Source: Paramicrosporidium saccamoebae KSL3
Taxonomy: Eukaryota; Fungi; Cryptomycota
Direction: 5' to 3'
Assembly: GCA_002794465.1 (NCBI GenBank)
Contig: MTSL01000181.1
Location: 1,113 to 17,910 of the forward strand
Length of the DNA: 16,798 nt
The notes below the pieces were generated by a model, which was given only the letters and a program-made list of their open reading frames with translations, had not been told where the DNA came from and did no database searches. The stretch's first letter is position 1; each line of letters begins with the position of its first letter. Shown piece by piece: positions 2,802-11,700 of the stretch. The position numbers and the translations under genes are program-made.

Positions 2802-4169
2802 TCAATGACTGATTGCTCCGGGATTAAATTTTGGGAATGTAATTGTCACAGACAGAGCAACTTCATCATCACTTTGCGGCAAGTCGTCTGAAGAAAAGGA
2901 TCTGGACATATTTCCGACACGTATTGACTTGCAGACCTGTTCCAGATGTCCCAGTCGCTTACTACATGTAAAAATGGCAGCAATAGTGTGCATACATGTG
3001 AGATCGCTGGTATTTGTTTACAAATTTCGATTGAAGTCGCTTCAATTTGGTCGTAAATTTTGATAGATCCTGCGATATTATTCCACTAATGTCATCAAGC
3101 GCGGGACAAAGAAAGTCATCGATGCTGTCTCTCGCCGATGGTACGATACCATTGCTGATCTCCTTTACCTCACTTTGGTTCATGATTGGAAGGCGTTGTT
3201 CTTCCGTCTCATTCAAAAACACATCGGGTCGATGTTTTTGACTAATAATGCATGACGAAGAAGAGCGTGAAAGGGGTGGAGGAGACGACTCACGGATCAA
3301 TGCATCTGCCAAATTGTCTGCCTCAGGAACCTTGACTGGGCCAGAAGAATTGCCAAGGAGGATTCCATTTGTCACAGACGTCCGTCCTATTTTTGGTACT
3401 TTGCGTTTCAAAGCCGACAGGGCGGTGGACAAAGACTCAAACGAGCCAAGCTCTACTTCCAGGAATACGTTTCGATCCGGTCCCTCTAACCCAAGTTGCG
3501 TTCGATTTAACACGCTCAAATTGTGAATTGAGCCGTATGTAATGTCGAGAACAAAAGGCTCGTCGTCATCTGGTCCCTTAAAGTAAGTGGTTAGTGGTAC
3601 TACTCTTACCCTTAGATTGATACTCACAGATTCACTGTTAACGTCAATCCAGAGACCACCGGCAATGCAGTTGTCAGAGTATTCTGTGTTGTTAAAGTGC
3701 ACACCAGCAGCCTTGATCGACGTGACTCTACAGCTTAAAAAGTGGAAAAGGGTGAACATTGCGCCTGCTTGCCTGTTGATTGTATTAAGATATTCGCGGA
3801 TATGCAGTGTATCCAATGGAGACACGATGATAGAAGCGACTCTGTCGTCTTCGGGTATGACATTAAGTTTAATACTTCGGGCAATCCTCGCAAGTCGACC
3901 CAGAATTGTCATCACTTGGCTCTGCAATTCATAGTCTCCAAGCTCTAATAGCTTATCTGCGAGGTTTCTACAACATAAGCATCAAAAAGATTCTACATTG
4001 TGTTCCAGATGTTTTCATTAGCCCAGTGGCAAACCTCGAGGGCCTCCTTTGTTTTGGTAGCAGAAATCTTGACAAGCGCGGCTTGCGCAGCGTCCTTTCT
4101 CTTTTCAAGCTCACCACCGCTGATAACACTGCTCCAGAGGATCTGAAAACTCGAGGATGCTGCCGACAT
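2802..4169 (-). CDS. Putative meiotic chromosome axis-core protein (SYCP2/Rec10/Red1-like), 434 aa
   Basis: Exons 4169-3997, 3967-2996 and 2961-2802; introns 3996-3968 (29 nt) and 2995-2962 (34 nt) keep the frame. LGDYELQSQVMTILGRL, IREYLNTINRQAG..FTLFHFLS, LWIDVNSESVS and RTSVTNGILLGNSSGPVKVPE resemble recalled SYCP2 N-terminal motifs; helical C-terminus. The gene model is solid; the family call is from memory. Confidence 0.7.
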
Positions 4170-4247
4170 AACTAAAGAGCGAGGGATTCATGCCCATTTT
4201 AAATATTACACATAGTATGGCAACTTTATTCTCAAAAAGGAGATTTC

Positions 4248-5934: not shown

Positions 5935-6620
5935 CTACTGGTAAATAGACTCCTCCAAAGACTTGTTAAGCGAAGCAACACGAGTAGCAACGCTAAGATC
6001 AATCGTTTTATCTCCAACCTCCACTAAAAGCCCCCCCATGATTTTCGGGTCGACAATCACATTAACTTTTGGCACCTGCCCTTCTTGGAGAAAACGAGAG
6101 ATTACACTCTTCTTGACAGATTCGATAGTCTCCCGATCCAATTCTGCCGCAGAGGTGATCTTGACAGCAACCTCTCGCCTGTGGGCGCGCATAATTTCTT
6201 CAAAACTCTCAATTATCGGTAGAGTCTGTGCAAGCCTGCCATTTTCGGATACAGTGCGGAAAAAGTTGACCACGATTTCAGAGTAGTTCTGCTTGCTCAG
6301 CATGGAAAGCACAGTAGCGCTCTTTTGATCGCGACGGCAGGAGGGGTCTTTAAGAAAGATTTGCAGCTCAGGTGACTTGGTGATGGCAGCTTTTACTTTT
6401 GTCATCTCGCCTTCCACTGTGCTTAAATTCCCTTTTTTCATACACGCACTATACAGGGCAGTTGCATATCTTCCTTCAAGACTAAACACTTTCAGGGGGA
6501 CCTAAAACCAATAAGAGGCAATGATTGCAAAATTTCAACTGTTCCATTAGAGATACTTGCAAAGGTTCGGCGCTAAAAGTAAGTCGTTTGCACACGCAGA
6601 TTGTAAAGTACCGCAATCAT
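5935..6620 (-). CDS. ATP5: Mitochondrial ATP synthase OSCP (subunit 5 / ATP5PO)
   Basis: Exons 6620-6612, 6572-6540 and 6501-5935; introns of 39 and 38 nt; 202 aa. MIA/RRTFASISNGT/VPLKVFSLEGRYATALYSA...NFFRTVSENGRL...VDPKIMGGLLVEVGDKTIDLSV. Confidence 0.95.
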
Positions 6621-6661: not shown

Positions 6662-7149
6662 ATGAACACCACATCTGAGAATGAGGCTTCTGTCGTAGAG
6701 GACTTGTATGCATGCCCAGAGAATATTATGACAGTGCATGTCTCAAATCCAATCACCCATCGTGGAGAATCTGACCCCTATACCGACTATGAAATTTATT
6801 GCAAAGTATTTGGCTATTATGCATGCTTTCTTACATCTCAGACGAGCCTACCGCTATTTAAAAAGCACGAATCCTCTGTTCGTCGAAGGTATTGCGAATT
6901 TCTGCAATTGCGCGAAGTCCTGATTGCTGAAAATCCTGGTGTAAGGATTCCCGACCTGCCGTCGAGAAGGATTTTTGGCAACAGATTCAGTGATGCTGTA
7001 ATCGAGGAACGACGGGTTGGATTTCAAAAGTTTTTACAAACGTAGGCATAATTATTGTTTCACCCTTTAGAGTTTGTACTCATCCCATTATACAAAACGG
7101 CCCGTCTGCCAGACTCGTAATCTCTTTTTTGCAAGATCCCACCCATTAA
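6662..7149 (+). CDS. SNX3: Sorting nexin-3 (PX-domain only, Snx3/Grd19)
   Basis: Exons 6662-6805, 6842-7041 and 7071-7149; introns of 36 and 29 nt; 140 aa. YACPEN..V.NP.TH, YTDYEIYCK/TSLPLFK...VRRRYCEF, IPDLP, NRFSDAVIEERRVG, VCTHPIIQNG. Confidence 0.93.
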
Positions 7150-9117: not shown

Positions 9118-10122
9118 TTAAGAATTTTTGAACTGTGCAGGTTTCTTAGATAAAAATGCTTTCATTCCCTCTTTTTGATCGTCCTATTAATTTAATAACA
9201 CCGATCATAAATAAGGTACAGTGGAAAAGGTCGAGTGGAACAGCCTGCGCTCAAACTCGAGGCCTGCATCTAGATGGACCTCAAAAGCTACAAATTAAAA
9301 ACACCCACAGCTTACACTTATTCACAGCTTCTTTGCACATCATCACAATGGGTGACGAGAACTTTGCTATTTCCGAAGCAGTTTTTAGAGACTCATTTAC
9401 TAGAGTATCACTCGGGAAAATCTTGCTAACCAGCCCTAATCATAATATAAATCAGCTGAGCTGCAGTACCGATCCGCTCAGCCTCTTCAGCAGAGATATG
9501 ACGTCCTGTAAGCATCATTTCCATGGCCTTGGATTTTCCGATAGCCTTTGGCAACCTCTGTGTTGCCCCTCCGCCCGGAATTGTTCCAAGTTTGATTTCA
9601 GGTTGTGAAAATTTGGCATTTTCTCCTGCATAGATAATATCACACATCATGGCCAGTTCACAGCCGCCTCCAAGCTAATGCGTAAATTTTCGTGTTTGAA
9701 TGTACAGCAAATCCGTTTACTGCAGCAATGATAGGTTTTCGGAAAGCACGAAACATTTTTGACCAGTGGCCCAGAAAGTCGTTCGAGTAGCATTGTGCGA
9801 AAGACAGATTGGCCATTTCGGCAATATCAGCGCCAGCTGAGAGTCAGTTTCATCAATCAAAAGATGTACCCGCAAAACTCTTTTCGCTTCCTGTCAAAAC
9901 CGCAGCACCAAAGTCTCCAGATCCATCAATAAATTCCAAGGCCTTCTGAAGCTCCAATGTCAACCCCGAATTCAGTGCGTTTAGTGCCTCTGGCCGATTC
10001 AGTTCGATTAAAGCGACATTTTCTCTGGCCGAGACCTTTAGAAATTTGTAAGCACCAACTTGCAATCATGATGATTCTGCTAAGCCAGAGATACCTGAAA
10101 GAAGCCGCCGGCTAGAGTGCAT
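9118..10122 (-). CDS. ECHS1: Mitochondrial short-chain enoyl-CoA hydratase (crotonase family, ECHS1-like)
   Basis: Exons 10122-10095, 10058-9870, 9836-9706, 9674-9470, 9435-9316, 9287-9220 and 9183-9118; introns of 36, 33, 31, 34, 28 and 36 nt; 268 aa. [66 protein letters not shown]; both catalytic Glu are present. Confidence 0.93.
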
Positions 10123-10816: not shown

Positions 10817-11700
10817 ATGATGGGATACGGATCACGGGGTGGTGGTACAACACGCAATTGGGTTCAGTACCAAACTCTTAGGTGGGTTCATGGACGCCGA
10901 TAATGGGTCCCAGGGAACTCTGACGAAAAACAAAAGTGGAGTCCAAACCATTCGACCAGTCACAATTAAGCAACTTAATGAAGCTGAAGTTCCCGAGGGC
11001 AGTGATGCTTTTTTCGTGGATAACGGTGGCAAGAGTACAGAACTTGGCCAGGTTTAGTTGCGCTCTGTAATGATTTACCTTGAAGGTTGTTATTGTGGGA
11101 TGTGTTCGCAGTATGAAAGAGAGCCCGGCCAGTGTGGATTACATTATTGAAGATGGCACTGGCAGCATTTCGGGAAAATGCTGGCAAGACAAAATTGGCG
11201 CGCCCGTATTGTAGGCCGCTGAAAGAGTTTATGATTTTAATTTGTAGGAATGGCCAGTGGGCTCGTGTATACGGGAGTTTGCGTTCGATGAAGGATTCCA
11301 GGACGCTGAATATTTTTTCAATCAAAGAGATTGTCGATCACAATGAAATCACGTTGCATTTTTTGCAGGCTATACAATTGAACCTCCCCACTGTATTTTG
11401 CGCATTCGTCATTTTATTATTTAGCGCGACACTCACGCACTTGTTGGTTTTGATTCCCTGTCGGCATTACAGAAGGCTATCTTGAGCGTTTATTCAACTT
11501 GCACCGTTCCCCAAGGCCTGCATTACGCCTCGGTAGTGCGAGCGCTATCGGACCGATACTCTTCCGACGATATCAAGTATGCGTTTCCATGAATCCAATT
11601 AACTTTCGATAGGGATACCATTACATGGCTCATGTCTGAAGGATATATATTTGAAACTCATGATTCTGATCATGCTAGAATTGTCACCACCACAGTTTAG
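10817..11700 (+). CDS. RPA2: Replication protein A 32-kDa subunit (RPA2/Rfa2)
   Basis: Exons 10817-10844, 10882-11051, 11086-11210, 11248-11392, 11425-11576 and 11613-11700; introns of 37, 34, 37, 32 and 36 nt; 235 aa. GGGGFM, TIRPVTIKQL, VVIVGCVR, IEDGTG, WARVYGSL, DHNEITLHFL, winged-helix WLMSEGYIF. Confidence 0.93.

What the first reader, a model, noticed from the sequence alone, without database searches (positions are those of the whole stretch)
2802..4169. Miniaturised SYCP2/Rec10/Red1-like meiotic axis protein: a sign of cryptic meiosis
Seen: a 434-aa spliced protein with GDYELQ (aa 68-73), IREYLNTINRQAG, LWIDVNSESVS (around aa 164), a Ser/Pro-rich linker and a helical C-terminus (ISQDLSKFTTKLKRLQSKF...KRLGHLEQVCK). 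Known: axis-core proteins have the order ARM-like, PH-like, closure motif, disordered region, coiled coil. From memory, SYCP2 carries GDYxLQ, RxFLNxxN and FWIDFN motifs in this same order. Inference: this is a very short family member (SYCP2 about 1500 aa, Red1 about 800 aa) lacking most N-terminal ARM repeats. These fast-evolving proteins are usually missed by annotation, and finding one in a microsporidia-like genome would imply a meiotic chromosome axis.
Basis: partly seen in the sequence, partly recalled or inferred. Interest (0 to 1): 0.85.

Follow-up and report, generated by a model that had tools for sequence, protein, structure and literature searches.

The report
Probable mini SYCP2-like meiotic axis protein
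A small, real gene of the amoeba parasite Paramicrosporidium saccamoebae probably encodes a very short relative of the SYCP2/Red1 proteins that form the meiotic chromosome axis. The match is suggestive rather than proven, and meiosis genes were already known in this organism.

Summary
A 434-aa protein is encoded on the minus strand at 4169..2802, split by two ultra-short introns of 29 and 34 nt. The window is Paramicrosporidium saccamoebae, and the gene is annotated, with different and probably wrong splicing, as hypothetical protein PSACC_02923.

GDYELQ, RIFLNLVN and FWIDFN are in mouse SYCP2 (PDB 5IWZ) in the same order with similar spacing. A fourth collinear block, YFKGPDDDEPF against FYIAGDEEDHQW, was also found.

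Statistics are suggestive, not decisive:
- hhalign against a mammalian SYCP2 profile gives E 0.0016 and probability 16%, with shuffle P about 6e-4.
- With the GDYELQ anchor removed, the downstream region still aligns on the same diagonal (P about 2e-3, roughly 3e-4 with the diagonal constraint).
- Pfam gives no hit, but its two SYCP2 models skip the best-matching stretch.
- No other real homologue appeared among 1.8 to 5.8 billion proteins.
- AlphaFold failed (pLDDT 34 and 39), so there is no structural test.
- The closure-motif likeness (P 0.036) and the C-terminal coiled coil are weak.

"Cryptic meiosis" is not new: the 2017 genome paper lists Hop1, Rec8, Spo11 and Dmc1. Divergent SYCP2-type proteins were already reported in Microsporidia. 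Verdict: a plausible new family member (about 0.65) of modest interest.

The parts
2802..4169 (-). Whole coding region of the 434-aa protein (three exons, two introns, stop at 2802-2804). It corresponds to NCBI PSACC_02923, which is spliced differently.
3997..4169 (-). Exon 1 (aa 1-57 plus 2 nt): N-terminal sequence that is helical by eye. hhalign places aa 12-57 against SYCP2 residues about 156-199 with low confidence.
   Evidence: codon score 0.229
3968..3996 (-). Intron 1, 29 nt, GTAGAA..TGTAG. It contains the in-frame TAG that splits the ORFs.
   Evidence: It has the same style as five control introns in the window.
2996..3967 (-). Exon 2 (aa 58-381): last ARM-like helices, PH-like beta domain, closure-motif-like block, disordered linker and the start of the C-terminal helix.
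3871..3966 (-). Anchor helix pair NLADKLLELGDYELQSQVMTILGRLARIARSI (aa 59-90; GDYELQ at 3922-3939). It aligns with mouse SYCP2 NMGERILDVGDYELQVGIVEALCRMTTEKRRQ (about aa 202-233).
   Evidence: BLASTP 28.9 bits, pairwise E 6e-5. This is the only part with pLDDT 70-77 in the second AlphaFold run.
3763..3801 (-). IREYLNTINRQAG (aa 114-126), aligned with SYCP2 CRIFLNLVNGILG.
3391..3759 (-). Beta-rich region (aa about 128-250) ending in a helix (SFESLSTALSALKRK). This is the putative PH/Spt16M-like domain. It contains LWIDVNSESVS (3622-3654) and TTYFKGPDDDEPF (3553-3591), aligned with SYCP2 FWIDFNLGSHT and LSFYIAGDEEDHQW.
   Evidence: Secondary structure from the low-confidence models. Collinear alignment.
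3319..3408 (-). KRKVPKIGRTSVTNGILLGNSSGPVKVPEA (aa 245-274), directly after the PH-like domain. It is a candidate HORMAD (Hop1) closure motif and resembles mouse SYCP2 395-414 and its flank (KQGISVAKTSIHVLFDASGSQILVPES).
   Evidence: The similarity is weak on its own (P 0.036). The position matches the rule given in PMC6349405.
3103..3318 (-). Ser/Pro/acidic-rich linker (aa 275-346), predicted disordered. The amphipathic stretch SIDDFLCPALDDISGII at its end is a speculative cohesin-interacting motif.
   Evidence: Composition. No regular structure over most of it (only one short helix). The CIM idea comes from preprint 10.64898/2026.01.19.700424 and is inference only.
2962..2995 (-).
   Evidence: An alternative 64-nt intron (3021..2958) would give 424 aa. 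No RNA data are available to decide between them.
2916..3102 (-). C-terminal basic amphipathic helix (aa about 347-397, spanning intron 2). It is the putative self-association or coiled-coil element.
   Evidence: A helix was predicted with the best pLDDT of that model (50-57). That piece read into the intron after aa 381. The heptad signal is weak. There is no PDB sequence match.
2802..2961 (-). Exon 3 (aa 382-434) plus the stop codon.

Best explanation
PSACC_02923, in the corrected 434-aa splice form, is most likely a highly diverged, miniaturised SYCP2-type axis-core protein. This family includes SYCP2, Red1, Rec10 and ASY3.

Inferred working model, in four steps:
1. Three to five ARM-like helices (aa 1-135) pack on a PH/Spt16M-like beta domain (aa about 135-250) to form the folded N-terminal module.
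2. The segment directly behind it (aa 245-274) acts as a closure motif. The HORMA domain of Hop1 (PSACC_01776) captures it, which recruits Hop1 to chromosomes.
3. A disordered Ser/Pro-rich linker (aa 275-346) may carry a short amphipathic cohesin (Rec8) binding motif.
4. The C-terminal helix (aa about 347-397) self-associates, alone or with an unidentified SYCP3-like partner. This builds the filament that scaffolds the chromatin-loop axis in meiotic prophase.

Shown here: the gene, its splicing, its small size, and a collinear, better-than-chance similarity to the last ARM helices plus the PH domain of SYCP2. Inferred only: the fold, Hop1 binding, cohesin binding, oligomerisation and meiotic expression.
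For: (1) The motifs are real in SYCP2, verified against 5IWZ_A.

(2) Alignments are collinear. MAFFT gives 25% identity over 188 aa and 19-24% to 21 mammals over 285 aa. hhalign gives score 32.9, E 0.0016 and 243 aligned columns.

(3) Shuffle controls for the whole region: real score 30.9 against mean 14.8, sd 2.65, max 24.3 (n=320), Gumbel P 5.6e-4. The 16 other long ORFs (120 aa or more) of the window reach at most 20.9 over 35 columns, against 30.8 over 120 columns for the target.

(4) Independent test with the GDYELQ anchor removed from both sides. hhalign still aligns REYLN..WIDVN..YFKGPDDDEPF, at query 41-123 against template 45-112, which is the anchor's diagonal. The score is 25.0.
- Global shuffles: 4 of 400 reach it, none of them on the diagonal.
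- Local-composition shuffles: 0 of 600, Gumbel P 0.0019, with only 17.5% on the diagonal.
- Joint probability is about 3e-4. Multiplied by the anchor's pairwise E of 6e-5, my rough estimate is 1e-8 to 1e-7 per comparison. That is about 1e-3 to 1e-2 after correcting for 1e4 to 1e5 families.

(5) The matching stretch is the one Tromer et al. call most diagnostic: the last ARM repeats plus the PH domain, combined with a C-terminal coiled coil.

(6) The Pfam negative result is weak evidence. In mouse SYCP2, ARLD covers residues 9-187 and SLD covers 278-389. GDYELQ and RxFLNxxN lie in the uncovered gap.

(7) The architecture and predicted secondary-structure order fit. A KTS[IV]..[IV]L[FL]..SG....VPE block sits exactly where SYCP2 and Red1 have their closure motif.

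(8) The genome has Hop1, Rec8, Spo11 and Dmc1, but no axis-core protein is listed.

NLADK aligns with NMGER, which the NCBI model deletes.
Against: - No test reaches database-level significance on its own. hhalign probability is 16%. The mammalian HMM gives 9 bits. Smith-Waterman shuffle P is 3e-4 to 4e-3. Anchored global alignment of the downstream region gives only z 2.1-2.6, P 0.01-0.03.
- Pfam SYCP2_SLD, which does cover the WIDxN block, gives no hit at E<=10.
- phmmer against PDB does not list 5IWZ at E<=10.
- No bridging homologue exists in any search or in metagenomes. The profile was mammals only.
- AlphaFold gave no confident fold, even with SYCP2 rows in the alignment (pLDDT 34.4 and 39.4). 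Foldseek therefore gave nothing.
- The closure-like block is weak (P 0.036). The best match of that segment within full-length SYCP2 lies elsewhere, in low-complexity sequence.
- The C-terminal helix is about 50 aa with a weak heptad signal. Red1's coiled coil is about 95 aa and plant ASY3's about 145.
- My combined probability is a rough product of partly post-hoc tests.
Confidence: 0.65

Rival explanations
1. It is a lineage-specific orphan protein of unknown role. Its resemblance to SYCP2 is a chance run of short motifs: one exact hexapeptide plus a few low-scoring blocks.
For: - There is no real homologue in 1.84 billion representatives or 5.8 billion clusters.
- The anchor alone would have E of about 10 in a PDB-wide search. 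This is consistent with 5IWZ being absent.
- Each downstream block scores only 23-26 raw BLOSUM62 points by hand count.
- Anchored global alignment gives P 0.01-0.03.
- There is no Pfam hit and AlphaFold is not confident.
Against: - With the anchor removed, the rest still aligns on the same diagonal with P about 2e-3, and 0 of 600 local shuffles reach the score.
- Four blocks are collinear with near-identical spacing.
- The architecture and the position of the closure-like block fit the family.
- The genome has Hop1, which in fungi, plants and mammals is recruited by an axis-core closure motif.
Confidence: 0.27
2. It belongs to another family with a PH-like or Spt16M-like domain, such as a FACT/Rtt106-type histone chaperone module or another ARM-plus-PH adaptor, and is unrelated to the meiotic axis.
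For: The SYCP2 SLD is structurally close to the FACT Spt16 middle domain (PMC5498334), and PH-like folds are common. The beta-rich region followed by a helix would fit many PH-like domains.
Against: No Pfam family of any kind is hit at E<=10, apart from noise. There is no PDB sequence hit to Spt16, Pob3 or Rtt106. The only better-than-chance similarity found is to SYCP2, and it includes the helices in front of the PH domain.
Confidence: 0.06
3. It is not a functional gene: either a chance ORF or a decaying pseudogene.
For: It is an orphan, and the two annotation models disagree.
Against: The 321-codon open frame has native codon usage, and the other five frames score negative. The two introns match the local consensus and restore the frame. 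The gene is tightly packed between neighbours, like other genes in the window.
Confidence: 0.02

Closest known systems
Mammalian SYCP2 (mouse SYCP2 N-terminal region, PDB 5IWZ; closure motif residues 395-414)
   Same: - Collinear blocks: GDYELQ helix, RxFLNxxN helix, WIDxN strand and YxxGxxxD loop.
- A KTS[IV]..L[FL]..SG..VPE-like block directly behind the folded domain, where SYCP2 has its HORMAD2-binding closure motif.
[quoted passage not shown]
   Different: - It is 434 aa against 1500 aa.
- Only about 67 residues precede GDYELQ, against 210 in SYCP2, so roughly 9-10 of the 14 ARLD helices are missing.
- It has a 9-aa insertion and an apparent deletion of about 14 aa in the PH region.
- The linker is about 70 aa against about 900 aa.
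- The C-terminal helix is about 50 aa, much shorter than the coiled coils reported for this family.
- Identity is 19-25%, and no Pfam ARLD or SLD hit is found.
Fungal Red1 (S. cerevisiae, 827 aa) and Rec10 (S. pombe), Pfam Red1 family
   Same: The domain order is the same: ARM-PH, then a closure motif immediately after (Red1 346-362), then a disordered region with a cohesin-interacting motif, then a C-terminal coiled coil. Red1 and Rec10 are the axis-core proteins of other fungi, and P. saccamoebae is a fungal-lineage organism.
   Different: The Pfam Red1 model did not hit. According to Tromer et al., Red1 and Rec10 are themselves highly diverged from SYCP2. The window protein shows its detectable similarity to the metazoan-type SYCP2 sequence.
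Divergent SYCP2-type orthologues reported in Microsporidia (Encephalitozoon intestinalis) and early fungi (Spizellomyces punctatus) by Tromer et al. 2021
   Same: These are the nearest phylogenetic neighbours for which family members have been claimed. They were found only by iterative profile 'hopping' and are fast-evolving.
   Different: P. saccamoebae is not named in the main text of that paper, and its supplementary tables are not held. The sequences could not be retrieved, so direct comparison was not possible.

Membership tests
SYCP2-type axis-core proteins (SYCP2/Red1/Rec10/ASY3/KKT17-18; criteria of Tromer et al. 2021 and West et al. 2019) | Significant profile similarity (E<1e-2 in an HMM or HH database search) to the last ARM repeats plus the full PH domain | tested here: inconclusive
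   hhalign against 116 mammalian SYCP2 N-termini gives E 0.0016 for one comparison, probability 16%, 243 collinear columns. Shuffle P is 5.6e-4. The anchor-free test gives P about 2e-3 on the same diagonal. This is above chance, but it is not a database-level E-value, and only a mammalian profile was available.
SYCP2-type axis-core proteins | Folded N-terminal module with ARM-like helices packed on a PH/Spt16M-like domain (as in 5IWZ) | tested here: inconclusive
   AlphaFold2 single sequence gave pLDDT 34.4. With SYCP2 rows in the alignment it gave 39.4. Foldseek against PDB found no match at E<=0.001. The predicted order helix-helix-helix, several strands, helix is compatible. Most ARM helices are absent, with 67 aa before GDYELQ against 210 in SYCP2.
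SYCP2-type axis-core proteins | HORMAD-binding closure motif directly after the N-terminal domain | tested here: inconclusive
   The block at aa 245-274 is in the right place and resembles SYCP2 395-414 plus its flank. The similarity is weak (P 0.036), and it is not the best match of that segment within SYCP2. Binding cannot be tested here, and the Hop1 sequence of this organism was not retrievable.
SYCP2-type axis-core proteins | Extended disordered central region | tested here: met
   Residues 275-346 are rich in Ser, Pro and acidic residues and have almost no predicted secondary structure. The region is about 70 aa, against 370 aa in Red1.
SYCP2-type axis-core proteins | C-terminal coiled coil that forms tetramers and filaments | tested here: inconclusive
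   There is a long predicted helix at aa about 347-397. The heptad a/d hydrophobic signal is not above shuffles. There is no PDB sequence match. Oligomerisation cannot be tested here.
SYCP2-type axis-core proteins | Co-occurrence with meiotic HORMAD (Hop1) and the Rec8 kleisin in the same genome | not tested
   This is taken from the literature, not tested here. PSACC_01776 (hop1) and PSACC_02365 (rec8) are listed in Supplementary file 1 of PMC5701793.
SYCP2-type axis-core proteins | Meiosis-specific expression and localisation to chromosome axes | not testable with these tools
   No expression or cytological data are available, and no sexual stage has been described for this organism.
Pfam SYCP2_ARLD (PF18581), SYCP2_SLD (PF18584), Red1 family | Score above the gathering threshold of the Pfam model | tested here: not met
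   There is no hit at E<=10 for the exon pieces, the spliced 434-aa protein or P0001. Caveats: ARLD covers mouse residues 9-187, which are mostly absent here. The strongest motifs lie in the uncovered gap at residues 188-277.

The most novel reading that the evidence does not exclude
This is the smallest SYCP2-type axis-core protein described so far, at 434 aa. It keeps only the last few ARM helices, the PH domain, a closure motif, a 70-aa linker and one short C-terminal helix. It would define a near-minimal meiotic axis scaffold. Because it keeps metazoan-type SYCP2 motifs in a Rozellomycota lineage, it would also suggest that the ancestral opisthokont axis protein was SYCP2-like and that Red1/Rec10 are the derived forms.
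Probability: 0.5. Interest if true: 0.45.

Novelty: new member of a known kind. Interest (0 to 1): 0.35.

Why it matters
If correct, this fills the one missing structural piece, the axis-core scaffold that recruits Hop1, in the otherwise complete meiotic toolkit already reported for P. saccamoebae. It also corrects a mis-spliced database entry.

A 434-aa version would be a compact construct for biochemical work on which parts of SYCP2/Red1 are indispensable. It would also be a useful bridging sequence for finding axis proteins in Rozellomycota and Microsporidia.

It does not change the existing conclusion that this organism probably has meiosis. SYCP2-type genes have already been claimed for Microsporidia, so the gain is incremental.

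Tried and rejected
1. Homologue searches with exon 2 found nothing real. The searches were the word-index search and the full phmmer scan of 1.84 billion representatives. The only extra hit, P0002 (E 1.7e-8), is a bacterial SBBP beta-propeller repeat protein. Its score is summed over seven repeats of a weak 60-aa match, so it was rejected as an artefact.

2. A search with mouse SYCP2 1-389, padded so that full-length proteins qualified, found 978 hits. Only the best 120 were shown, all mammals, so no diverse profile could be built.

3. A search with the window protein padded to 700 aa, restricted to region 66-169, found only itself.

4. Two metagenome scans used the shared motifs [DE][VL]GDYELQ and [CI]R[IE][FY]LN[LT][VI]N. 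They matched 481 stretches, about the number expected by chance, and tblastn confirmed none.

5. Pfam scans of all pieces, the spliced protein and P0001 gave nothing relevant.

6. PDB sequence searches gave nothing relevant, for either exon 2 or the C-terminus.

7. AlphaFold2 was run twice and both models were poor. I did not try to get round that and used the contiguous exon-2 translation instead. Foldseek on the poor model gave only noise.

8. A simple heptad score did not single out the C-terminal helix.

9. An alternative intron 2 (3021..2958, 64 nt, giving 424 aa) was considered. It is less likely because it is about twice the local intron length.

10. The supplementary tables of Tromer et al., which list SYCP2-type genes per species, are not held.
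Full report
**What is there**

The finding lies on the minus strand. Three open pieces, 4169..3993, 3927..2962 and 2993..2802, join into one 434-aa protein when two very short introns are removed. These are 3996..3968 (29 nt, GTAGAA..TGTAG) and 2995..2962 (34 nt, GTATGC..TGTAG). GDYELQ is at aa 68-73, IREYLNTINRQAG at 114-126, LWIDVNSESVS at 163-173, and the C-terminal ISQDLSKF...KRLGHLEQVCK at 355-393.

The gene is real. Its codon usage (0.142 bits per codon) matches seven confirmed genes of the window (0.135-0.228), while the other five frames are negative. Exons 1 and 3 score 0.229 and 0.170. Five control introns, which I located in the conserved TRM1-like and SNX3-like genes, are 29-36 nt with GTA.. 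donors and YAG acceptors. Removing four of them restores continuous, recognisably conserved protein sequence.

**Organism and annotation**

The exon-2 protein matches only NCBI 'hypothetical protein PSACC_02923' of Paramicrosporidium saccamoebae, a member of Rozellomycota. That 393-aa model uses an atypical 83-nt GTTTGC..ATAAG intron and a different frame for the last exon. It also keeps residues (NLADK) that align with SYCP2, so the database model is probably mis-spliced.

The protein cannot be much longer. An Erf4-like gene ends at 4232, 62 nt upstream of the ATG, and an in-frame TGA lies 21 nt upstream. The convergent TFIIE-beta gene ends at 2800. The neighbours are ordinary housekeeping genes: TGT, Tfa2, Erf4, a Zap1-like zinc finger, OSCP, a PX protein, TRM1, PSF1, a GT8 enzyme, CMS1 and UTP21.

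**Is the remembered SYCP2 resemblance real?**

Yes. I checked the mouse SYCP2 N-terminal sequence against PDB 5IWZ chain A and it matched residue for residue over 1-389. It contains GDYELQ (211-216), CRIFLNLVNG and FWIDFN in that order.

MAFFT aligns the window protein to it collinearly, with 25% identity over 188 aa and 19-24% to 21 mammals over 285 aa. hhalign does the same.

Directly behind the domain, KIGRTSVTNGILLGNSSGPVKVPE aligns with SVAKTSIH--VLFDASGSQILVPE. This is the mapped HORMAD2-binding closure motif of SYCP2 (residues 395-414) plus its flank.

**How strong is it?**

Each single test is modest:
- BLASTP finds only the GDYELQ helix pair (28.9 bits, pairwise E 6e-5). That would be E of about 10 in a PDB-wide search, and phmmer against PDB indeed does not list 5IWZ.
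- An HMM of 116 mammalian N-termini gives 9 bits.
- hhalign gives score 32.9, E 0.0016 for the single comparison and probability 16%.
- Against 320 shuffles of the query, the real score of 30.9 compares with mean 14.8, sd 2.65 and max 24.3 (Gumbel P 5.6e-4).
- Smith-Waterman shuffles give P of 3e-4 to 4e-3.
- The 16 other long ORFs of the window reach at most 20.9 over 35 columns.

The most informative test removed the GDYELQ anchor from both sides. hhalign still aligned REYLN..WIDVN..YFKGPDDDEPF with score 25.0, at query 41-123 against template 45-112, which is the anchor's own diagonal. Four of 400 global shuffles reached that score, none of them on the diagonal. None of 600 local-composition shuffles did (Gumbel P 0.0019), and only 17.5% of the shuffles fell on the diagonal.

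A stricter anchored global alignment gives only P 0.01-0.03. The closure-like block alone gives P 0.036.

Multiplying the anchor E by the anchor-free result gives my rough estimate of 1e-8 to 1e-7 per comparison. That is about 1e-3 to 1e-2 after correcting for 1e4 to 1e5 families. The estimate is partly post hoc and should be read as 'probably homologous', not 'shown'.

**Negative and inconclusive results**

Pfam finds no SYCP2_ARLD, SYCP2_SLD or Red1 domain, even at E<=10. This counts for less than it seems. In mouse SYCP2, ARLD covers residues 9-187, most of which the window protein lacks. SLD covers 278-389. The two best motifs lie in the uncovered stretch 188-277.

No bridging homologue exists:
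- A full phmmer scan of 1.84 billion representatives returned only the protein itself and a bacterial repeat-protein artefact.
- Two further index searches and two metagenome scans added nothing.
- My one search for SYCP2 relatives returned only mammals.

AlphaFold2 failed both without an alignment (pLDDT 34.4) and with SYCP2 rows added (39.4). In the second run only the GDYELQ helix pair reached 70-77. Foldseek was therefore meaningless.

The secondary-structure order in both poor models is compatible with ARM-end, PH, linker and helix: three helices, five to six strands, a helix, a mostly unstructured stretch, then a long C-terminal helix. It is not diagnostic. The C-terminal helix is about 50 residues with a weak heptad signal, so 'coiled coil' is a hypothesis.

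**Most likely function**

[quoted passage not shown] Tromer et al. found that similarity over the last ARM repeats plus the PH domain, together with a C-terminal coiled coil, best discriminates true members. That is exactly where this protein matches.

I therefore think it most likely (about 0.65) that it is the P. saccamoebae axis-core protein. It would recruit Hop1 (PSACC_01776) through aa 245-274 and self-assemble through its C-terminal helix. The stretch SIDDFLCPALDDISGII may be a cohesin-binding motif, but that is speculation.

The main rival (about 0.27) is an orphan with a chance resemblance.

**Novelty**

Meiosis in this organism is not a new inference. The genome paper reports Rec8, Spo11, Dmc1, Hop2, Mnd1, Msh4/5 and Hop1, plus diploid allele frequencies (PMC5701793). 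It does not list Red1 or SYCP2.

Tromer et al. already report highly divergent SYCP2-type orthologues in Microsporidia and in early-diverging fungi. Whether P. saccamoebae was in their tables could not be checked.

This is best filed as a probable new, unusually small member of a known family, together with a corrected gene model. Interest is modest.

Noticed in passing
window 2802-4169 (minus strand), compared with P0001: The public model PSACC_02923 (393 aa) seems mis-spliced. It uses an 83-nt GTTTGC..ATAAG intron (4034..3952) and a different frame for the last exon. Local introns are 29-36 nt, GTA..YAG.
   Followed up: yes
window 6806-6841, 7042-7070 (+); 8351-8321, 8171-8139, 7849-7816 (-): Ultra-short spliceosomal introns (29-36 nt) occur in the SNX3-like and TRM1-like genes. 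Some are read through in frame, so plain ORF lists look continuous or are oddly split.
   Followed up: partly
window 4169-4232 and 2800-2802: Gene packing is extreme. There are 62 nt between the Erf4-like stop codon and the next ATG on the same strand. The stop codons of the convergent TFIIE-beta gene and the target gene are one base apart, so their 3' UTRs must overlap.
   Followed up: partly
P0002: A bacterial SBBP beta-propeller repeat protein scored E 1.7e-8 against exon 2 only because seven weak repeat matches (each about 30 bits or less) were summed. This is a trap for automated annotation of this orphan.
   Followed up: yes
window 3587-3934 (+): A 115-aa antisense ORF lies inside the target gene. 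It has no Pfam hit, and all three antisense frames score negative for codon usage, so it is probably spurious.
   Followed up: partly
window 9156-9608 (+), 10975-11485 (both strands): ORFs of 116-150 aa with no Pfam match lie between the TRM1-like, PSF1 and GT8 genes. They could be further orphan genes or non-coding spacers.
   Followed up: no
window 5935-6489 (-): An ATP synthase OSCP subunit gene is present. This agrees with the published finding that this microsporidia-like parasite keeps a canonical mitochondrion.
   Followed up: no
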